Shown here in pieces: positions 1 to 60,053 of a stretch of DNA of 64,000 bases. The notes beneath the pieces are model-generated. The model saw nothing but the letters and a program-made list of their open reading frames with translations. It made no database searches and was not told the origin of the DNA. The position numbers and the translations under genes were made by a program. This DNA comes from Macrostomum lignano (lineage: Eukaryota), in contig NIVC01000587.1 in assembly GCA_002269645.1 (NCBI GenBank), forward strand, positions 372,001 to 436,000, written 5' to 3'. Each line of letters opens with the position of its first letter. The first letter of the stretch is position 1.

Positions 1-231
1 AGCTGCGTCATGCCATTGAAAACGCTTGGCAGCAGCTTTCCCAGGACTTTCTGCGCCGCCTCATCCTGGGGATGCCCCGCAGAGTCGCCGCACTTCAGCG
101 TGCGAGGGATCGTTCTTAAGCATTTGTGATTCTAACTGCATATTGCAAAAAAATAACTGTGTTGATTTTTCTCGAATGACGTTTATTATTGATTCACTCG
201 CGGCGACTTATTTGCGTAACTCGAGGGTTGA
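1..231 (+). mobile_element. 3' end of a Tc1/mariner-type DNA transposon (transposase C-terminus fragment)
   Basis: Frame from nt 3 reads LRHAIENAWQQLSQDFLRRLILGMPRRVAALQRAR, matching the Tc1 C-terminal pattern LxxAIxxAW...LI.SMPRR..A...ARG. It is truncated by the window edge and probably frameshifted at the very end. The right TIR and TA TSD were not confirmed. Confidence 0.6.
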
Positions 232-4365: not shown

Positions 4366-6053
4366 GGTATATAATTCTGCATCTAAAAAAATTGTTTCTT
4401 GGGTAAAAAACAAAGCAAATTAGCAAACCTATTAAAAAATAACTAGTCATTATTCCCTTAAGCTATGTTAGCTATGGAAATTTTGCATTTAAAACTAAAA
4501 CCTAAAATAGTCTAAAACCTATAGACTATTTTATCCCTAAGCCAATTTGGTCATAGATTATTTAAACAATTTTAATTACCAATCCAAGGCAACAAATATT
4601 AATTAACAAAACTAGCATATAAACATAGATTTATATTATAAGTAACCATTAAATTTTATAATTTTTTAGAACTATAATATGAAAATGGTTAAATAACATA
4701 ATCTTACCTAATGCTATATAAATATATAGATATATCATAATTAAATAATAATATAACCTTGTATAGGCCTAGCTATACTAGGCCTAGACTTTGATAAAAT
4801 AAATGTTTGCAGGAAAGAAAAGTCTAGATACAAAATATCTATGATTATGGCCACAATAATTTTGGGGCAAAAACAAAATTTAAATAACAAAAATGAGAAT
4901 ATAGTCAAAACATTCTTATTTTATAAATGTAGGCCTGGCCTAATGGACTTTTTATGCTAGAAATTAACCATTTAATTTTTGTTTGGTTTTAAAAAATAAA
5001 ATGCTTTGATATTAAAAGCTTATTATTATCCCCATGCTGCATGCATTAAAACTTGATTTATTTGGTAGGCCTATATTTAATGATCAATGTGCTTCCCAAC
5101 CCCATCAAGTTTGATTTTAATTTTTCTAGGCCTAGGCCCCTATGCCAATTGTTAAATAGGTTGTAAATTAGGCCTATCAAATAAAAAATCAAAGTACCTT
5201 AGTAATCTGCAATCACCCCATTCCAAATTTTCTAGATCCCAATCTGAAATGAAACCAATAGAATAGGTCTAGTCTAGTCTAGTCAGTGTGGCAGAACCAG
5301 GTAGTAGGCCTAACGATGATGATATGATATATTTTAATGATATTCTGACAATCCATCTATCTAGGCTAGGCCCCTAAGTCATATCTAATATCCATATCTG
5401 TATTTTAGGGATCGCAGTCGCAGTCAGCTTAAACAAGCCTGCTGCTGGCACTTGTACTCAAAATTAAGCATATTCAAAATTGATGATGTATCGAAAGTTG
5501 CTTTAGGAATAACTAACTCTGTACAGTGAAATGTATGTAACTCCCGTTTTTTTTATAAACGAATAGAAAGCAATACTATTCAGTTGTGATTAGGCTACAA
5601 TATTGAATTTTGACGGTACTAGTTTGTTTGTCATTGTGCAGGCAATATGTACGAGTATCCAGCATGCAGTAAAGGCAACCAGCATGCAGGATATGCATGT
5701 TTATCGTACCTAAAATTGTGCTGAATTCGCGTATAAACTGCTGACACGGGTGGTTGCGTGGAATAAAACATTCGCTTTTAACTTTTACTAAAAGTTTTTA
5801 TAGATTTTTTCGCGCATTTTTTGTTTCATCTACACGGTGACTATGCTGTGCATGTACAAAAATTGAAACATTGTTATACGTGGCCATTTTTTGACGTGTG
5901 TCCGGCCTTTTTTGAAATTTGGCCTATGCCTCGGAGCCTTTCGGAAGCCTCAGCTATGAGCTGGACATCAGTGTCACAATCACACGTAGGCTTATAGGAC
6001 ACGTTTTTCTCGGCTTCGGAAGCGGTCAATACGTTTTGTGTACGCGAATGAAT

Positions 6054-6313
6054 GGGCCTTTTCATATTGCTTGTTCTGGTACCAGAACCAGAACCAATTT
6101 GTGAAGTATAACTTTTTGTCTCCATAACTAGAGGGAGATACGTGCTATAAAGTTTTTATTATTGAATGACAATCGCCAAAAAGAAAGTAAAAAATTGTGC
6201 TAAGTTAGGTTGTTAAGGCAGTCAAATATTAACAGAGTTTAATAGTTATACTGCTGTTTTTCTTGGAATTCCGAACCGATTCTGGTTCTGGAATTGGTAA
6301 TATGAAAAGGCCC
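6054..6313. mobile_element. 260-bp MITE with GGGCCTTTTCATATT TIRs and AAT 3-bp TSD (Harbinger-like, family uncertain)
   Basis: Left end gggccttttcatatt (6054); right end aatatgaaaaggccc (6313); aat flanks both sides (6051-6053, 6314-6316). Confidence 0.6.
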
Positions 6314-6559
6314 AATGAGAAATACTGAGCTGGACCAATTGGCTTACAGCCTCTTTCGAAGAAGTTAGCGCGTACTTTATTTTAATTTCAACTTAAATAA
6401 AGTGTTAAAAGTCAAGTGTTCTTAATATATGGACGTCATATGCCTAGTTTTCTTTTTAAGACCTATTTGAATTGGGAGGTTTTATTTTAGAGCCTATTTC
6501 ATAGTTTGCCTAGGCTAAATTTGTAAAATAAAAAAATAAAAACAAATATTAAGAGCAAG

Positions 6560-7443
6560 AGGCTTTTCACATTACCAATACCAATTTCAGAACCAGAATT
6601 GGTTTAGATCTTCCAAGAAAAAAAAGCAGTAGGCCTATAGCTATTTAACATTGTTAATTGTTTGACTGCTTTAACAGCCTCAATTTGCACAATTTTCACT
6701 TTCTTGCTTGGCTATTGCCATTCAATAATTACAACTTTGGCAATCTTCCAGTTTGTTTTGTGATATTAGGGCCTAGTTTTGAGTTTGTAATGGTGCATCA
6801 ACATAATGACATGCCAGAAAATGATGTCTCAGTCTATGGCCAAAAGGGATGCAAAATAGAGTCAGAGGAGTAACAGTAACAGTAACAGTGACAGTAATAG
6901 TCTATGGCCAAAATTGCCAACCACACCATCATGAATCATCGGCTCCATTTTGTCAACCCCTACGATGCCACAGTACATACCAACACAATAGAAGGATTGT
7001 GGGCACTAGTTAAGCTAAAGTTCTATAATATGCATAGTATATCCAATGCCCTCTTTGAACTATATCTTGAGGAGTTTCTATGGCATTGCCTATATCCTAG
7101 CGCAGCATTTGGCGCTGTGTTGTATTGGGTAGCGTAGTGCATTATTATCCTTTGTAACTTTGTTTTCTAGGCCTACCCCTTAATTGTTACTGTTATTCAT
7201 TAGACTCTATTTTGTATCCCTTTTGGCCATAGGTATCGTTTTCTAGTGTGTCATTATGTTGACATATCATTTCAAACTCAAACATAATATTGCGAAACAA
7301 ACTGGAAGATTGCTATAACTTTATTATTATAGCTTATATATCCATTATCTCTCCTACTTTAGGCCTAGGAGACAAAATTTTACTTCACAAATTAGATCTA
7401 GGCCCCTAGTTCTAGAACTAGAACAAGCAATATGAAAAGGCCC
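6560..7443. mobile_element. Second, more decayed and inverted copy of the same MITE family, interrupted by a Merlin-type insert
   Basis: 6560-6660 is the reverse complement of 6225-6313, and 7405-7443 is the reverse complement of 6054-6095. Confidence 0.5.
6725..7330 (+). mobile_element. Degenerate Merlin/IS1595 (ISXO2-like) transposon derivative: long inverted arms around a transposase C-terminal fragment
   Basis: ORF 6904-7137 NHRLHFVNPYDATVHTNTIEGLWALVK...LFELYLEEFLWH matches the ISXO2-like motif NH..FV.P..GVHTNTIEG.W...K...YL.EF.WR. Arms 6725-6890 and 7184-7330 align as inverted repeats. Confidence 0.75.
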
Positions 7444-9187
7444 TAACTAAGAAGAAATGTTATGTCTAGATTCTAAACTAAGATGCAATTTAAATTTATG
7501 TCTTAATGGTTTATCTGCAAATGTAAATAAATGGTTAGATTAGGAGGATTCTTATATTATAGGCCTAGACAATATATAAGCCTAGGCCTGTTAATTTAGA
7601 AAGATAGAATTAGAAAAACTTATTCAATATCAATAGGCTAGTAGTAGGCCCTAGCAATAGTTAATTCAAATAAGAATAAATAAAGTATTCTTTCAATTTA
7701 TAATCAGTGGTATAAGGGAAAGGCTAGGCAAAGGGGAATAAGGAGATGTATCTCTCCTATGGCTATAAGGCTATGCTAGCTATGGGTATAGTCGATAGTT
7801 CATACAATTTTTATAAAAGTTAGGCCTACCTTATACAATACTAATAAAAAGCAATAGTCTTACTAAAACTAGTTGTATCTCTCTATAAAAAATTCTGGCT
7901 ATGTGACTACTTAGGCCTATAATCTTGATTTTACTAAGTTTTGTTATTATAATCCTTGTTGAAAATTAATGACAAAAGTGAAATTGTTTATCAAAAGATA
8001 TTATATAAATTACCTATATTTAATTCTTATATATTAGCATTTCAAAATTCATATCAAATAAAAATCAATATCTAGGCATATAACTTAAGCAAAACTAATA
8101 ACAAAGGTTATATAGGGCCTATTCTCTTTTGTTATATAATAATTTAAGTAAGGCCTTGGAGAAATAATATATAGGTGATTATAGGATAAAATTAAAAGAA
8201 ATAGGCCTAGGCCTATCCATTTTATTTTACAATTACCTAACATTAGAATTATAATATAAATAATCTATAGTTTGAAAAATAAAAATTATTGAATGTAAAC
8301 TAGCACACTAGCCAAATATCAGTTAGGGCCTAGTCATTCTAAAGGCATAGAGTCCCAATCAATATCAAATAGCTTATTATTAAAAGAAGTTTTTATAGAT
8401 TTTAGACATTTTTCTATAGATTATACAAAAAAAACTCAAGTCTAGCCTTTATAATAACAATCATAGCAAAGCAATGCCATAATATATACTTTTTTAACTA
8501 TATAAAAATTATATCTAAGATAAGAATACTAAATACAATGTCACAAAAGTAGCAAGCTAGGCTAAATTTAAATTTATTGCAATTAAATTTATTTAGTAAG
8601 CTTAGGATTTTTAATTAATTAAAATTGCTATAACTAATCAAACTAGTTGCCTAATTACAAAGATTGTTTCTTGAGCATATTAAAAAAGTGACATTTTTAT
8701 GAATGGCTATCTAGCATGCTTTAAAAAGTGTTGGCACCAAAGGGGCTAAGGGGCTGCATGCCAGAAAGACAGAGGTGGTGTACTAGAGAGGCTAAGAGGT
8801 GGCATGCCAGAGGGGCTGAGGGGTGGCATGCCATAGGGGTGGTGCACTAGAGGCAAAGGGGTAGCATACACTTAAAGGGTGGCACATGGATATGACAATG
8901 TTAAAGGGATATCACCTAGATCTGCTATGCTCGGCGCGAAGTGTGTGATTCTTGGCACGTGTCCGCGGACTTTGAGAATTTATTCAAAGCTAAAATAACA
9001 AAAAAAGCAATTTAGTAACATAGCAAGATGAAGGCGTAAGCCAATTGCTCAAAGGTGCTCAGAATTTCATAGGCAGTAGACAATTTCACTTCAAGTGTAG
9101 TAATCTGTGAAACTTGCGCTTACTTTCATACTCATTGCCCTTTTATTGCATTTTTTCTACTCCAGCTGCAAGTCTAAACTACTTAAA

Positions 9188-10101
9188 ATGGGCCGCCGAA
9201 GGAAGGCTAGGAAGCCGCCGCCAAAGCAGAAGGCCATTATGCCGCTGGACATGCAGTTCAATTGTCCATTCTGCAATCATGAGAAATCTTGCGAAGTCAA
9301 GATGTAAGTGTGTGTACCTGAATGTGCACTTTAAAGACCCCTTTGCATTGCGCTTTGCACTTTGATCTCATTCAACTCTTACGGTTGTGTCTCACGTGTC
9401 TCATGTGAGATCTCATGGGTGCATGATATTTCCCGTTTCTTGTGTGATCTCACATGTGTACTTCACGTTTCTCATGTAAGATCTCATGGGTTCATTTCAC
9501 GTTTCTTATGTAAGATTAATGGGTTTATTTCACGTTTCTCATGTGAGATCTCTTAGGTGTGTGGTATTTCACGTTTCTAATGGCCGTGTGTGTATTTCAC
9601 GTTTCTCAAGTGAGATCTAATGGGTGTTTTATGCTTCTCATTGAGATCTCATGGGCTGTATTTCACGTTTCTCATGTGAGATCTCTTAGGTGTATGATAT
9701 TTCCCGTTTCTTGTGTGAGATCTCACAAGTGTACTTCTCGTTTCTCATGCGAGATCTCATGGGTTTATTTCACGTTTCTCATGCGAGATCTCATGAGCAG
9801 CTTTCACGTTTCATACGTGAATTTTCCTACAACGCATTTCGCGTTCCTGATACCTGAGATCTCTAATCATTGAACTATGGATTGTAACATCATAATTCCC
9901 ATTTTAAAAGCTTGCTAAACCAGCCACCATGAAAAAGCTTCAATTCTGGCACAAAATCATCTCAGGAATCGAGCAGCCGGCGTCGGCTCAATCTCCTGCC
10001 GGGTCTGTCTGGAAGACTTCCAGACCAACATTAACTACCTGTCCGAGCCTATAGACGTCTACGGCGACTGGGTTGACGCCTGCGAGGAGGCCAATGCGTA
10101 G
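9188..10101 (+). CDS. ELOF1: Transcription elongation factor 1 homolog (Elf1/ELOF1), 2 exons: 9188-9303 and 9966-10101, 83 aa
   Basis: [39 protein letters not shown]|[44 protein letters not shown]. CxxC...CxxC zinc ribbon; phase-2 GT-AG intron (at|gtaagt ... ctcag|g); 252 nt in total. Confidence 0.97.
9365..9870. repeat. Degenerate tandem repeat in the ELOF1 intron (TTTCACGTTTCTCATGTGAGATCTC core)
   Basis: About a dozen imperfect copies fill the intron. Confidence 0.8.
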
Positions 10102-12507: not shown

Positions 12508-15500
12508 GGGAGTACGAGATCTGCTAGCCGAAATCTGCTAGCCGAAGTTTGCTAGCCGAAATGTGCTAGCCGAAATCTGCTAGCCGAAGTTTGCTAGCGA
12601 GAAATTTGCTTGCCGAAATCTGCTAGCCGAAATCTGCTAGCCGAAATGTGCTAGCCGAAATGTGCTAGCCGAAATCTGCTAGCCGAAATGTGCTAGCCGA
12701 AATCTGCTAGCCGAAGTTTGCCAGCCGAAATGTGCTAGCCGAAATCTGCTAGCCGAAGTTTGCCAGCCGAAATCTGCTAGCCGAAATCTGCTAGCCGAAA
12801 TCTGCTAGCCGAAGTTTGCCAGCCGAAATGTGCTAGCCGAAATGTGCTAGCCGAAATCTGCTAGCCGAAGTTTGCCAGCCGAAATCTGCTAGCCGAAATC
12901 TGCTAGCCGAAATCTGCTAGCCGAAATGTGCTAGCCGAAATCTGCTAGCCGAAATCTGCTAGCCGAAATCTGCTAGCCGAAGTTTGCTAGCTGCCTTGCT
13001 CTCGTAGCTGTTGCATGTTATTTGCTGTGTTTTGATTCCGATTTGAGCTGCTTTGATTCGTACGAGTAAATATATAACTTATATACCATATACTGCCACT
13101 ACCAGCCATTAAGACTGAAAGTTGTCTGTATAGATAAGTTTAAATTTAACTACCTGAACTACAGCTGCCTGAGCTACCTGAACTACGGTCTTACAGCTGA
13201 TAATGCTAAAACATTATCAAATGTCGTACGAGTAAAAAAGGACAAAAAATTATAAATGATTTTGACGATTTCCAAGTGCAGTTTTAGCATATACAGTACT
13301 TAAGATATTTTCCATCGCTTACGGCACTGTGTACAAGCAAAAACTCTATGCAGGTGTGGCCCACAAGCTCTTACCCTGTGATCATGGATGTAATATATTT
13401 ACTTTATTCAATAGTGTTAGCTCGGAGTCGATTATTGAATCACTTTCACTTGACAATCAAGCTGCATGCTCTCGCGGCTTACTTTGCCTTCTTTCGTTCT
13501 TTTTTATTTATTCTTTAGCGCTGCCTTTGCTCATTACAACTCTATGGGTTTGGCCAAAGACAGCATACCGACGCACACACAAGCCGATACTAACAAATAG
13601 CTTGTATATGAACTTTTCAATCCACCTACGTTAAAACCTAAATATTATTTTCTTTTTGTCTATGACGTCATCTACTGATTGCGTTTTAACACGTACATGT
13701 ACGAGAACCCACGGCGAAGGCTAGTTGTCCCATGATTTTGCGGGCCGCACGGCCCACGGAATCGTCAATGTGTGCCCACGATTTTAGTCTATGGCATTTA
13801 TTATTAAGCGTAGAAAAAGATAAATTTATCGAAGTAACAGTACATGCTAGCCAGCATAACAAAAGTACATTTATAAACAATACGTCAATAGCAGAATAGT
13901 TCATCAATGCTTCATCAAAAGCCATGCAGCGTTAAAGATAGAAGCTGAGTCTTACACCGTCTTTCTCAAGCACTGTTTGTCTCCTTTACAAATCGATGGA
14001 TACTAGCCCGAAAGCCACGAATCGTATCCGGTGCATAGGTCTTCGTTCCAAGCGCAGGATTAGCTCGCAGACTTACGTACCAGAGGCGCAGATAGCCGTC
14101 TAAGTAGCTTTCAATGTCATCAGGCAGGTTTTTCTCTCGAAGAAATTTCTTGAACCGATTAATTTGATTCTTAGTGGTTGCTAAGGTAGATGCCGACTTT
14201 GACGACTGTTCAAGTCGTTTGATGTCCTCTAGTTCTTGTACATCTAAGTCGCGATACGAATCTTCCTGAGTCCGTAGTTCCGCCAAAAACGTTTCCACGT
14301 CATTGAGGTCCAGGATTGGCAATCCCGACCACTGATCGACAGACGTCTTCGCGCTCATGGACGCAGTTTGGACATGAATTCCAATTCAGCACTATCCAAG
14401 CCACTAATATCGCCAGTGGCGATTCTTTGCAAATTGATCATGCCTCGTGCTCAATAATTAGTGGTCGTGCTTGTTGACTTCCATATATATATTCGCTCTT
14501 TTCTTCAGGATTCTATCAGCTGTTGCAAAAATACAGTTTAAAAAGCCTGAGTATTACCACAGACTAAAGTGGCGGGCAGGAAAGATTTTGAACGCGGGCA
14601 GGAATGAATTCTGTGCCCGCTAGTTTCGTCTATGGGTAATGCTTAGTGGCGCCCTCGAAATGATGAGACAACACAGTTCTGTCTATGCATTTTCGGGCAG
14701 AAATGAGACGGAATCCTCGGTCTGCGAAGGCAGACCTCGGATTTCGCTCGTTCCTGCCCTCAAATCCATATGTTGTACTCGCGGGCTGCGATCTCGTCTA
14801 GCCCGGTCGTTTTGTTTCCCCGGTGTAGCGGGTTCGGTGCGGGACTGCCCCGGGCGCGCGGCGGAGGGATGGACAGAGGACGAACGACTGGCGCTCCTCG
14901 AGGCGGATGGCCACTCCGAGGGGAAGAGGAAGAGATGCGACCCGGGGCGCACAGGCACTCCTTGGTCACGGAAGGCTCGGGGTACTTCCGCGGTCAGCGG
15001 AACGGATAGCCACTCAGAGCCGGCCCGGGAGTCACCGAGGTGAATGTGGAACGAGGTGAAGGTGAAGGATTGGCCGGGGCGTACAGACACTCCAGACCAA
15101 TCAAGAGATACGAGGTGATGGATTAGCTGGGGCGTACAGACACTCCAAGCCAATCGAAGAGTGCAGGTGAGCAAGGGGGTGAGTAGGTGAAGCGATGAGG
15201 CGGCGAGGATGGAGGGAAGACACGTGCAGAGAGCCCCAAAAAACGCGAACGCAACCCGAATAAACGTAATTTAAGCTCACCGGGCGGGGTCAAATCGACT
15301 CATGCAACGCAGTTTATTTGGCCGTAGTAACTGTTCTGGCAGCTCGGAGACGGCGGGTGGCACGGATTAGCTGGTGATGCACTGTTCGAGAATTCACTGG
15401 GCTCGTGCAGTTTTTTGTACTTTTACAGTAGTTTCACTACTCAGTAGCTGGTGTAGCCCTAACCGAAAACCAAGCAGCGTGCCACCGGCCGGCTCCAAGC

Positions 15501-17020
15501 CAGCTAATAAATAGTATGCAGAAAAAATGGGGGAGTGGGCCAAACCGGCCTGAGCGCAAACACACACAAAACAGAACCCTGCGAGCACCCCACCCTAGCC
15601 CAGCCAATCAAAACACGCGCTGGGTAAGGCTTTACGAACGAGGGGGGGGGGTAGAAAAGCGAGGGTCTGCCGGCCCAGCCAGCCAATCAGAGCACACGTT
15701 GGCTGCCTAAAACCAAAGCCGGCTGAACCAACTCAAACCAGCTAGGCCGGCAGACCGGGCGGTTCGCATGCACCAAAAAAAAACAAGTTGATGAGAAGGT
15801 CATTGTGGCGCAGGCCACAACACATAGACAGAACCATTAGGCGGCAGATTAGGTTGTCCAGATTAAGTCGTCCCCACAACAGATTGCCTTCTTAATTTAC
15901 TCTGACTACCGAGAGCGGGCAAACAAAACAACTTCTTGTCATACGAGTGCTAGCTACAAAGAAATTTCGGATTCAGTAATTTTTAATTGCATTATATTAC
16001 GATACAACAATGCAGGCTGCAATTATTTTTATATATTGCAATTTGCAGATCACTGCTAATAAGCACGACAAAGAGATTAGAGCGAAAAACGCAAATTTAT
16101 TTGTCCTGCATGATAAGTCCTGCAAAGTTTCTTGCGAAATTGGACAAGAAAAAATGTGTCTAGCAAATTACAACTTCGTAAATTGCTGTTCGCCGGTTTT
16201 GGTTAGATTATCGCTAGCAGATTTCGGCTAGCAAAATCCTCGCTAGCAAAATTCCTGCTAGCAAACTTCGGCTAGCAGATTTCGGCTAGCAGACTTCGGC
16301 TAGCGGATTTCGGCTAGCAAACTTCGGCTAGCAGATTTCGGCTAGCACATTTCGGCTAGCAGATTTCGGCTAGCACATTTCGGCTAGCACATTTCGGCTA
16401 GCACATTTCGGCTAGCAGATTTCGGCTAGCAGATTTCGGCTAGCAGATTTCGGCTAGCAGATTTCGGCTAGCAGATTTCGGCTAGCAGATTTCGGCTAGC
16501 ACATTTCGGCTAGCACATTTCGGCTAGCACATTTCGGCTAGCAAACTTCGGCTAGCAGATTTCGGCTAGCACATTTCGGCTAGCACATTTCGGCTAGCAA
16601 ACTTCGGCTAGCAGATTTCGGCTAGCAGATTTCGGCTAGCAGATTTCGGCTAGCACATTTCGGCTAGCACATTTCGGCTAGCACATTTCGGCTAGCACAT
16701 TTCGGCTAGCAAACTTCGGCTAGCAGATTTCGGCTAGCACATTTCGGCTAGCACATTTCGGCTAGCAAACTTCGGCTAGCAGATTTCGGCTAGCAGATTT
16801 CGGCTAGCAGATTTCGGCTAGCACATTTCGGCTAGCACATTTCGGCTAGCAAACTTTGGCTAGCAGATTTCGGCTAGCAGATTTCGGCTAGCAGATTTCG
16901 GCTAGCAGATTTCGGCTAGCACATTTCGGCTAGCAAACTTCGGCTAGCACATTTCGGCTAACAAATTTCAGCTAGCAAACTTCGGCTAGCAGATTTCCTG
17001 CTAGCAAATTTCATAGACCC
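12508..17020. mobile_element. Foldback/Mutator-like non-autonomous DNA element, 4.5 kb, with tandem-repeat TIRs
   Basis: 9-bp TSD TGAAATAAG at 12499-12507 and 17021-17029; GGG termini (gggagtacgagatctgctag vs reverse complement gggtctatgaaatttgctag). Inverted arrays of a 14-bp unit AATCTGCTAGCCGA at 12518-12992 and 16205-17010. Confidence 0.85.
13408..14456 (-). mobile_element. Internally deleted Crypton-like (tyrosine recombinase) element nested in the foldback element
   Basis: ORF 14358-13966 (STLATTKNQINRFKKFLREKNLPDDIESYLDGYLRLWYVSLR...TYAPDTIRGFRASIHRFVKE) resembles the N-terminal core-binding region of Crypton/DUF3504-type recombinases. 6-bp terminal direct repeat TCAATA at 13408-13413 and 14451-14456. 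The catalytic domain was not seen. Confidence 0.65.

Positions 17021-25504: not shown

Positions 25505-60053
<34,549 letters not shown>

What the first reader, a model, noticed from the sequence alone, without database searches (positions are those of the whole stretch)
4760..8335. Dense TA-GGCC-TA motifs that are demonstrably insertions at TA sites (candidate footprints of an unidentified TA-targeting element)
I count at least 14 exact TAGGCCTA in about 3.6 kb (e.g. two near 4764-4787, 5066, 5127, 5169, 5305, 6630, 7168, 7360, 7560, 7821, 7912, two at 8202-8216). About 8 variants TA-G(2-3)-C(1-4)-TA also occur, against only 2 exact copies noticed in the rest of the window. Two paired inverted-repeat arms serve as internal controls. 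(i) 6241-6270 reads aatagttata-ctgc, while the reverse complement of its partner at 6630 reads aatagctataGGCCTActgc. (ii) The arm at 6767 reads atattaGGGCCTAgtttt, while the reverse complement of its partner at about 7285 reads atattatgttt. So TA became TA+GG(G)CC+TA. By analogy with the known Tc1 footprint TA-CATG-TA (two terminal nucleotides from each end plus the duplicated TA), this implies repeated insertion and excision of a TA-targeting element with GG...CC ends, concentrated in one chromatin domain. Stacked forms (taggcctaggccta) suggest re-use of the regenerated TA.
Basis: partly seen in the sequence, partly recalled or inferred. Interest (0 to 1): 0.75.

Follow-up and report, generated by a model that had tools for sequence, protein, structure and literature searches.

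The report
Recurrent TAGGCCTA insertions at TA sites
In one AT-rich, transposon-riddled stretch of the flatworm Macrostomum lignano genome, TA dinucleotides keep turning into TAGGCCTA by a clean 6-8 bp insertion that still differs between copies of the locus; the cause, most likely the scar of an unidentified TA-targeting transposon, is not yet found.

Summary
There are 14 exact TAGGCCTA in 4764-8215, against about 1 expected in the whole window. Seven further TA-G(2-4)C(2-4)-TA variants lie in an AT-rich block at about 4380-8660.

The window is Macrostomum lignano contig NIVC01000587.1. The block lies upstream of an ELOF1 gene.

The indels between them are real.

Two further haplotypes or homeologs of the locus from the same assembly allow polarisation. 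Six motif-type indels fall in 2.45 kb. Four of them are polarised by an independent outgroup, and in each the motif is the derived insertion at a TA; the other two are unpolarised or messy. One insertion (7912) is private to the window's haplotype, whose branch carries only 2 substitutions. Three or four more events lie just upstream.

The rate is about 0.5 insertions per TA per substitution per site. It is confined to this block: none occurs in about 12 kb of adjacent DNA or in another triplicated locus.

The mechanism is unproven. A Tc1/mariner-like excision footprint fits the anatomy, but no TA-flanked GG...CC element exists in about 150 kb examined. Templated copying gets no support. Deletion, substitution and artefact are rejected.

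The parts
4380..8660 (.). AT-rich, CpG-poor, non-coding block upstream of ELOF1. It is a nest of polymorphic DNA transposons and carries the motif at about 5 per kb.
   Evidence: GC 0.22-0.39. CpG o/e 0.05-0.26 against 0.8-1.1 elsewhere. No Pfam hit apart from one transposase remnant.
4764..4786 (.). Two exact TAGGCCTA (4764-4771 and 4779-4786).
5066..5073 (.). Exact TAGGCCTA.
5127..5142 (.). Stacked TAGGCCTA + TAGGCCCCTA sharing one TA.
5169..5176 (.). Exact TAGGCCTA.
5305..5312 (.). Exact TAGGCCTA.
5362..5376 (.). Stacked TAGGCTA + TAGGCCCCTA.
6054..6313 (+). Transposon 'T' copy 1. It is a 260-bp MITE with TIR GGGCCTTTTCATATTGC. It is absent from haplotype L001, whose empty site GAATGAATGAG gives a 3-bp TSD of AAT. 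It carries no motif and serves as the outgroup for copy 2.
   Evidence: TSD class per PMC4482050
6559..7443 (-). Transposon 'T' copy 2, inverted relative to copy 1 and about 18% diverged from it. It has an internal inverted repeat (D 6740-6881, D' 7185-7313) and an IS1595-like transposase remnant at 6904-7137. It holds 5 motif insertions.
6630..6637 (.). TAGGCCTA, a 6-bp insertion relative to copy 1 (TTATA|CTGC). It is present in all three haplotypes, so it is an older event.
6767..6775 (.). TAGGGCCTA, a 7-bp insertion. It is absent from haplotype L001 and from the paralogous arm D', so it is derived in the window/L002 lineage.
7168..7175 (.). TAGGCCTA, 6 bp absent from L001 (CTAGCCC against CTAGGCCTACCCC). 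There is no independent outgroup.
7360..7367 (.). TAGGCCTA, a clean 6-bp insertion. It is absent from L001 and from copy 1.
7399..7408 (.). TAGGCCCCTA, an 8-bp insertion. It is absent from L001 and from the other three TIR arms, which read CCAGAACCAGAA without interruption.
7560..7567 (.). Exact TAGGCCTA, shared by all haplotypes.
7645..7653 (.). TAGGCCCTA, shared by all haplotypes.
7821..7828 (.). Exact TAGGCCTA, shared by all haplotypes.
7912..7919 (.). TAGGCCTA present only in the window's haplotype. L002 and L001 read ACTACT-TA-TAATC. This is the youngest event: its branch carries 2 substitutions in 2392 columns.
8113..8121 (.). TAGGGCCTA, shared by all haplotypes.
8202..8215 (.). Stacked TAGGCCTAGGCCTA. 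In L001 the second unit has decayed to GGCTTA by substitution.
8324..8332 (.). TAGGGCCTA, shared by all haplotypes.

Best explanation
Shown. In this AT-rich transposon nest of Macrostomum lignano, TA dinucleotides repeatedly acquire a clean insertion of G(2-4)C(2-4) plus a second TA. Usually this is TA to TAGGCCTA. The process is germline, recent, still polymorphic among copies of the locus, and strongly local. The copies then decay by ordinary substitution (TAGGCCTG, TAGAGCCTA, GGCTTA).

Inferred. Each event is a 2-bp staggered break at TA, which gives the TA duplication. Both broken ends carry the same few G residues on their 3' strands and are then joined, which gives G(n) followed by C(m), a palindrome. 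The best-known process that does this is integration and later excision of a TA-targeting cut-and-paste transposon (Tc1/mariner/pogo-like chemistry). Its inverted termini would be G-runs, and 2-4 terminal nucleotides of each end would stay on the flanks. This is the analogue of the Tc1 scar TA-CA|TG-TA. The element itself has not been found.
For: Enrichment and specificity.

Polarity:
- 7399 is absent from 3 paralogous TIR arms and from haplotype L001.
- 6767 is absent from arm D' and from L001.
- 7360 is absent from copy 1 and from L001.
- 7912 is absent from both other haplotypes.
- A 14-bp L001-private insertion containing TAGGCC at about 6806 is absent from arm D'.
- Two independent clean insertions lie 11 bp apart in L002 (6163) and L001 (6779). 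TAGGCCCTA in L001 (6047) faces TA in L002.
- No site has the motif in both transposon arms, as ancestral presence would require.

Rate: 6 events against 94 substitutions in 2392 columns with 320 TA sites.

Anatomy matching a TIR-transposon scar:
- The TA duplication is exact.
- The core is always G-run then C-run, never CCGG.
- New events are born as GGCC x6, GGGCC, GGCCC and GGCCCC.
- There is no flank preference beyond TA.
- Regenerated TA sites are re-used at about the chance rate.

The block is a landing pad for cut-and-paste elements. Five different polymorphic DNA-transposon insertions lie within about 12 kb.
Against: - No TA-flanked element with GG...CC termini occurs in the window or in L001, L002 and L004-L006, about 150 kb in all.
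- No haplotype carries an element at a site where another has the scar.
- No intact transposase lies in the window. The Tc1-like piece at 1-117 is a 45-aa remnant.
- One-sided scars (TAGGTA, TACCTA) are not enriched.
- Four-C cores need longer retained ends than the 2-3 nt known for Tc1/mariner (own knowledge).
- I know of no Tc1/mariner family with G-run termini (own knowledge).
- The density (about 4% of TA sites) and the locality are extreme for footprints: 0 events against about 17 expected in another AT-rich locus.
- Five of 6 new events sit inside one 750-bp transposon copy (P=0.004), which the model does not predict.
Confidence: 0.42

Rival explanations
1. Element-free break-and-fill. 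A TA-specific nuclease, for example a domesticated transposase, makes a 2-bp staggered cut. Or breaks arise at fragile AT-rich palindromic DNA. In either case the ends are filled in, each 3' end receives a few untemplated G residues from a polymerase with terminal-transferase activity, and the ends are ligated. This gives TA-G(n)C(m)-TA.
For: - It yields the same anatomy as the best explanation without needing the missing element.
- Core length is variable at birth.
- New events cluster in the inverted-repeat-rich transposon copy 2, which also has higher substitution divergence (about 4% against 2.6%).
Against: - The core has a strong mode at exactly 2+2. Cores of 1+1 (TAGCTA) and one-sided forms are not enriched, which is odd for untemplated tailing.
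- A general repair signature should appear at other indels, but none of about 35 other indels of 4 bp or more has it.
- No telomerase-like continuation (TAGGGTTAGG) is seen.
Confidence: 0.2
2. Self-templated spread. A nascent or broken 3' end terminating in TA pairs with the TA of a neighbouring TAGGCCTA, copies GGCCTA and returns. This would be template switching or polymerase-theta-type templated insertion, so that the motif begets the motif.
For: - Activity is highest where motif copies are dense and absent where they are rare.
- One event in L001 is a complex 14-bp insertion. Thirteen of its nucleotides equal the reverse complement of a motif copy 760 bp away.
- Rare core variants recur locally.
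Against: - New insertions share no more flank identity with other motif copies than random TA sites do. P ranges from 0.07 to 0.99 for 9 events, and the 13-nt match has P=0.25.
- Eight of 9 events are exact G(n)C(m)+TA with no copied flank and no accompanying deletion.
- New events avoid the motif-rich flank: 1 among 205 TA sites there against 5 among 78 in the transposon.
- The model does not explain the origin of the first copy or the palindrome.
Confidence: 0.12
3. The motif is ancestral and the short allele is a precise deletion between the two TA (microhomology or slippage). Alternatively, the motif arises by substitution, for example from CAGGCCTG or as a residue of C-to-T hypermutation.
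For: - Two-sequence comparisons alone cannot polarise an indel.
- The block is CpG-poor and TpA-rich.
- Some CCAG to CTAG changes occur in one arm.
- One variant (CTAGGCATA at 8072) was lost in L002 in a complex event.
Against: - Every case with an independent outgroup shows the motif as derived.
- No motif site is shared by paralogous arms.
- CAGGCCTG and CAGGCCTA occur 0 times in the block.
- Nine clean 6-8 bp indels cannot be substitutions.
- Substitutions seen at motif sites destroy the motif or change it by one step; they do not create it.
Confidence: 0.03
4. The motif cluster is functional and kept by selection, for example as a homotypic cluster of binding sites for a palindrome-binding factor upstream of ELOF1. 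This reading is not exclusive of the mutational origin.
For: A perfect 8-bp palindrome lies dense in an intergenic block next to a promoter.
Against: - Copies decay freely by substitution between haplotypes.
- They arise inside dead transposons.
- They also occur in unrelated AT-rich DNA.
- There is no spacing regularity.
Confidence: 0.05

Closest known systems
Tc1/mariner (IS630-Tc1-mariner) excision footprints, e.g. Tc1 TA-CATG-TA and the Sleeping Beauty canonical scar TAC(A/T)GTA (own knowledge)
   Same: The TA target is duplicated. A few nucleotides from each inverted terminus are left between the two TAs, so the scar is a short palindrome or near-palindrome. Scar length varies by 1-2 nt. 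The regenerated TA can be hit again.
   Different: No donor element is known or found. The core is G-run/C-run, whereas known families end in CAG/ACAG/CCAG/TTAGG-type sequences. The density is about 4% of TA sites in one 4-kb block, and the rate rivals base substitution. One-sided scars are missing.
N-nucleotide addition at V(D)J and NHEJ junctions by family-X polymerases (own knowledge)
   Same: G-biased untemplated addition to both 3' ends gives G-rich then C-rich junctional inserts.
   Different: Here the length is nearly fixed at 2+2, the site is strictly TA with a 2-bp duplication, and the events are germline and locus-restricted.
Polymerase-theta templated insertions at break repair sites (own knowledge)
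   Same: Small insertions bounded by microhomology, with local clustering.
   Different: No flank copying above chance, almost no accompanying deletions, and a single insert sequence.
Mobile GC clusters and short palindromic elements in AT-rich organelle genomes, e.g. yeast mitochondrial GC clusters (own knowledge)
   Same: GC-rich palindromes pepper AT-rich DNA, insert with duplication of a short AT-rich target, and are polymorphic between strains.
   Different: Those elements are 30-60 bp hairpins in mitochondria. This is a 4-6 bp core in nuclear DNA of an animal.
Pangu/PIF-Harbinger (PHIS) MITEs (PMC4482050).
   Same: T has GG-starting TIRs and a 3-bp AAT (ANT) duplication shown by an empty site.
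   Different: T does not target TA and cannot give a TA-GGCC-TA scar. Its internal coding remnant is IS1595/Merlin-like, so its superfamily is unsettled.

Membership tests
Tc1/mariner-type excision footprint | The insert is flanked by a duplicated TA, where the unoccupied allele has a single TA. | tested here: met
   Clean at 7912, 7360, 7399, 6630, L002 6163, L001 6779 and L001 6047.
Tc1/mariner-type excision footprint | The inserted bases are the terminal 2-3 nt of the two inverted ends of a resident element. | tested here: inconclusive
   The core is symmetric, G(n) then C(m), as inverted ends would give. No element is available to compare with, and cores of up to 4 C exceed the known 2-3 nt.
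Tc1/mariner-type excision footprint | A TA-flanked TIR element with matching termini exists in the genome. | tested here: not met
   None in about 150 kb (the window plus five loci) by TIR scans. The whole genome could not be searched with these tools.
Tc1/mariner-type excision footprint | An occupied allele exists at a site that carries the scar in another haplotype. | tested here: not met
   Three haplotypes were compared over about 4.5 kb. All polymorphic sites are scar against plain TA.
Templated (polymerase-theta type) insertion | The insert plus adjacent bases are copied from a nearby template, with junctional microhomology and often a deletion. | tested here: not met
   Flank identity is no better than for random TA sites. 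Eight of 9 events have no deletion.
RIP-like or CpG-decay residue (substitution origin) | The motif differs from the ancestral state by C-to-T or G-to-A substitutions, not by length. | tested here: not met
   All informative cases are 6-8 bp (one 14 bp) length differences. CAGGCCTG is absent.
PHIS/Pangu MITE (element T, the internal control) | A 3-bp ANT target duplication and TIRs starting GG or AG. | tested here: met
   The empty site in L001 reads GAATGAATGAG, against AAT|GGGCC...GGCCC|AAT in the window. The criteria come from PMC4482050.
PHIS/Pangu MITE (element T, the internal control) | Relationship to a PHIS (IS5-like) DDE transposase. | tested here: not met
   The only coding remnant inside copy 2 matches DDE_Tnp_IS1595 (E=5e-6, at the gathering cut-off). 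It may be a nested fragment.

The most novel reading that the evidence does not exclude
The micro-insertion is not a transposon scar. It would instead be the product of a dedicated or hijacked enzymatic activity: a TA-specific staggered nuclease plus symmetric G addition, or an element-free self-propagating palindrome. That activity would write TAGGCCTA into AT-rich, break-prone DNA. This would be a sequence-specific germline mutational process in an animal, with a per-site rate near that of base substitution.
Probability: 0.3. Interest if true: 0.85.

Novelty: new variant of a known kind. Interest (0 to 1): 0.64.

Why it matters
If these are footprints, M. lignano harbours a very active, unrecognised TA-targeting cut-and-paste element. 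M. lignano is a regeneration model with established transgenesis. The visits of this element can be read from the genome even where no copy remains, so it is a candidate natural gene-transfer vector and a source of germline instability.

If they are not footprints, this is a new kind of sequence-specific mutational process.

Either way, the motif is a countable and polarisable marker. It could be used to date AT-rich DNA and transposon copies, to separate haplotypes or homeologs in this neopolyploid genome, and to measure local break and repair activity. Each insertion also creates a StuI site and in-frame TAG stops, which matters for annotation and cloning.

Tried and rejected
Rejected readings:
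- Mitochondrial or other foreign coding origin of the block. No long ORFs appear under codes 1, 4, 9 or 14, and there are no Pfam hits.
- tRNA or Rfam features. None were found.
- Periodic satellite origin. The spacing is irregular and there is no TRF array.
- RIP-like origin. The substitution spectra between arms are not strongly GC-to-AT, except in one arm.
- Telomerase healing. No TTAGGG continuation is seen.
- Element T (GGGCC...GGCCC ends) as the donor. Its target duplication is AAT.
- TA-flanked MITEs at the locus. On inspection they have 7-bp and 9-bp duplications.

Literature: the word searches for TAGGCCTA returned mainly bacterial, primer and other unrelated papers; judging by titles and abstracts, none concerned this motif. 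An M. lignano transposon paper held nothing on DNA-transposon families.

Dead ends:
- Exact look-ups of four window ORFs found nothing.
- The homology searches with the IS1595-like remnant and with the P-like transposase ORF found nothing.
- I first took L001 to be the window's own contig and corrected this. The source is L003, and L001 is a third haplotype.


Full report
**1. What and where**

[quoted passage not shown] A two-exon ELOF1 gene at 9188-10100 encodes a protein 100% identical to the UniRef M. lignano entry. Members of that protein cluster lie on contigs of assembly GCA_002269645.1. One of those contigs, NIVC01000587.1 (locus L003), is 100% identical to window 1-20101 at an offset of 834.

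The window is mostly minisatellite arrays at about 50% GC. The finding lies in the one strongly AT-rich stretch, about 4380-8660, with GC 0.22-0.39. It sits between a GGAGGGTATG minisatellite and the ELOF1 promoter. The block has no tRNA or Rfam match. It has no coding signal apart from a 77-aa IS1595-like transposase remnant. It is CpG-poor, with o/e 0.05-0.26 against 0.8-1.1 elsewhere.

**2.

- TAGGCCTA occurs 16 times in the window against 0.98 expected. Fourteen lie between 4764 and 8215.
- Seven further TA-G(2-4)C(2-4)-TA and five TAGGCTA lie in the block.
- TAGGCCTA is the block's commonest 8-mer: 14 observed against 0.15 under a dinucleotide Markov model.
- Fourteen of 35 GGCC in the block are flanked ta..ta, against none of 252 GGCC elsewhere.
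- Among all words TA-X-TA with X of 2-6 nt, only this family stands out. TACCGGTA and TAGCGCTA are absent, and TAGGTA/TACCTA do not appear among the enriched words.
- Per TA site, the block carries the motif about 65 times more often than the rest of the window.
- The bases next to the motif show no preference beyond TA.

**3.

Self-comparison shows two copies of one non-autonomous DNA transposon, here called T, with TIR GGGCCTTTTCATATTGC.

- Copy 1 is a 260-bp MITE at 6054-6313.
- Copy 2 lies at 6559-7443 in the opposite orientation. It has an internal inverted repeat (D 6740-6881, D' 7185-7313) around the transposase remnant.
- The copies are about 15-20% diverged.

It adds two more: 7360 (+6/7) and 7399 (+8). 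At 7399 the other three TIR arms read CCAGAACCAGAA without interruption. No site carries the motif in both arms.

**4. New evidence: three copies of the locus**

The same assembly holds two other versions of this locus.

- L002 (NIVC01004371.1) is 98.7% identical over window 5753-8778.
- L001 (NIVC01000330.1) aligns from window 6314 onwards and is about 3% diverged in substitutions.

In the three-way alignment of window 6314-8765 there are 2392 ungapped columns and 320 TA sites. The window-specific branch has 2 substitutions, the L002-specific branch has 19, and the L001 branch has 73.

Six of the ten indels of 5 bp or more are of the motif type:

| Position | Change | Present in | Absent from |
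|---|---|---|---|
| 6767 | +7 | window, L002 | L001, arm D' |
| about 6806 | +14, TACATTAATAGGCC | L001 only | window, L002, arm D' |
| 7168 | +6 | window, L002 | L001 |
| 7360 | +6 | window, L002 | L001, copy 1 |
| 7399 | +8 | window, L002 | L001, three TIR arms |
| 7912 | +6 | window only | L002, L001 |

6767, 7360, 7399 and 7912 are each polarised by an independent outgroup as a derived, clean insertion at a pre-existing TA. The L001 event near 6806 is derived too but complex: 14 bp with two adjacent substitutions. 7168 has no independent outgroup and needs one adjacent substitution. The insertion at 6630 is shared by all three haplotypes but absent from copy 1, so it is older.

Just upstream, where only L001 and L002 are collinear, there are more events:

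- L002 6163 and L001 6779 are two independent clean TA to TAGGCCTA insertions 11 bp apart.
- L001 6047 reads TAGGCCCTA where L002 has TA.
- L001 5794 lies inside a 42-bp insertion.

Motif copies also decay by substitution: TAGGCCTG at 7590, TAGAGCCTA at 6483, GGCTTA in L001. One variant (8072) was lost in L002 in a complex replacement.

Insertion at TA is therefore shown. Deletion, substitution from CAGGCCTG (0 copies) and assembly error are rejected.

**5. Rate and locality**

- Six events against 94 substitutions gives about 0.48 insertions per TA per substitution per site.
- A systematic scan of all pairwise alignments found no motif-type indel in the remaining aligned DNA of this locus. 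It also found none in about 12 kb of alignments among three copies of another locus, L004-L006.
- The first 5 kb of L004-L006 are as AT-rich as the block (GC 0.32-0.35) and 7% diverged. The block's rate predicts about 17 events there, and 0 are seen.
- That DNA nevertheless carries 2-5 motif copies against 0.22 expected. So the motif is a wider feature of AT-rich M. lignano DNA, while recent activity is patchy.
- Within the block, 5 of the 6 new events fall in 6700-7450, inside T copy 2, which holds 78 of the 320 TA sites (P=0.004). They occurred in both lineages and not in the motif-rich flank. This is unexplained.

**6. The neighbourhood is a transposon nest**

Several insertions are polymorphic among the three haplotypes:

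- T copy 1. The empty site in L001 reads GAATGAATGAG, giving a 3-bp AAT duplication. With GG-starting TIRs this fits the Pangu group of PIF/Harbinger-like elements (PMC4482050).
- A 4.1-kb P/THAP9-like transposon in L002 with an 8-bp duplication.
- Two different MITEs inserted within the same 9 bp, one per haplotype, with 9-bp and 7-bp duplications.
- A 4.5-kb foldback-like element at window 12508-17020 with a 9-bp duplication.

None of these targets TA.

**7. Mechanism**

What must be explained is an exact duplication of TA, a core that is always a G-run followed by a C-run, a strong mode at GGCC, and variable cores at birth (GGCC x6, GGGCC, GGCCC, GGCCCC).

The simplest geometry is a 2-bp staggered break at TA whose two ends each carry a few G residues on the 3' strand before joining. 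A cut-and-paste element with inverted G-run termini and TA target specificity would produce exactly this on excision. The evidence against it:

- No TA-flanked GG...CC element in about 150 kb.
- No occupied allele in three haplotypes.
- No enrichment of one-sided scars.
- The extreme locality.

An element-free variant, with a TA-specific nuclease or fragile-site break followed by symmetric G addition, is given about 0.2.

Templated copying from neighbouring motif copies was tested. New insertions share no more flank identity with other copies than random TA sites do. They are clean, and they avoid the motif-rich flank. This reading is given about 0.12.

Telomerase-type extension finds no support.

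Stacked forms occur at roughly the frequency expected if regenerated TAs are ordinary targets: 3 against 1.2 expected.

**8. Comparison, novelty and limits**

The anatomy works like a Tc1/mariner excision scar. Membership fails on the two features that need the element itself. I found no description of this motif or process in the searchable literature, though that search matches words only.

I rate it a new variant of a known kind, with a substantial chance (about 0.3) of being a different, element-free process.

The genome-wide census, transposon-family consensus sequences and a donor search therefore remain to be done.

Noticed in passing
window 12508-17020: A 4.5-kb segment absent from both other haplotypes. 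It is flanked by a 9-bp duplication (TGAAATAAG) and has termini GGGAGTACG.../...CATAGACCC. Sub-terminal arrays of a 14-nt minisatellite lie in inverted orientation (12515-12991 and 16213-17012). It looks like a polymorphic foldback/Mutator-like element. It carries a 130-aa ORF at 13966-14358 (minus strand).
   Followed up: partly
window 6054-6313 and 6559-7443: Transposon family T (TIR GGGCCTTTTCATATTGC). Copy 1 is an insertion polymorphism with a 3-bp AAT duplication, which is Pangu/PHIS-like. Copy 2 encloses an IS1595/Merlin-like transposase remnant at 6904-7137. Its superfamily is therefore ambiguous.
   Followed up: partly
L002 1588-5730: A P-element/THAP9-like transposon (THAP and transposase ORFs) with an 8-bp duplication GTTGAGCC. 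It is absent from L001. Left of window 5752 (L002 6272) the window and L002 are not collinear at all.
   Followed up: partly
L001 6234-6632 and L002 about 5915-6025: Two unrelated MITEs are inserted within the same 9 bp of AT-rich DNA in different haplotypes. One has a 9-bp TSD (ATAAAAATA) with a TIR of about 55 nt. The other has a 7-bp TSD (AAATATT) with TIR GGGCAATCTTCAAG. This is a very narrow insertion hot spot.
   Followed up: partly
window 4380-5400 and 7450-8660: The AT-rich flanks are almost free of CpG (o/e 0.05-0.26), with TpA excess and mild CpA/TpG deficit. The rest of the window has CpG o/e of about 0.8-1.1. This suggests past cytosine deamination or methylation confined to this block.
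   Followed up: no
window 6700-7450: Five of six recent motif insertions fall in this 750-bp inverted-repeat-rich part of T copy 2 (P=0.004). Substitution divergence is also higher here, about 4% against 2.6%.
   Followed up: partly
window 1-64000: Minisatellite density is extraordinary: 94 TRF rows, with arrays of 14-61-nt units up to 2.2 kb. Many lie inside introns of a multi-PDZ gene on the minus strand (exons near 26.4, 31.1, 52.5, 54.0, 54.9 and 59.2 kb). (GTA)158 lies at 31452-31925.
   Followed up: no
window 9188-10100; L004-L006 10001-10316: ELOF1 exists as an intron-containing copy (this locus, three haplotypes) and as an intronless copy in a different gene neighbourhood (three haplotypes). 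The intronless one is possibly a retrocopy.
   Followed up: no
window 1-117: A 45-aa C-terminal remnant of a Tc1-like transposase (LRHAIENAWQQLSQDFLRRLILGMPRRVAALQRA...). No upstream coding part or recognisable TIR is present, and it is not a candidate donor.
   Followed up: yes
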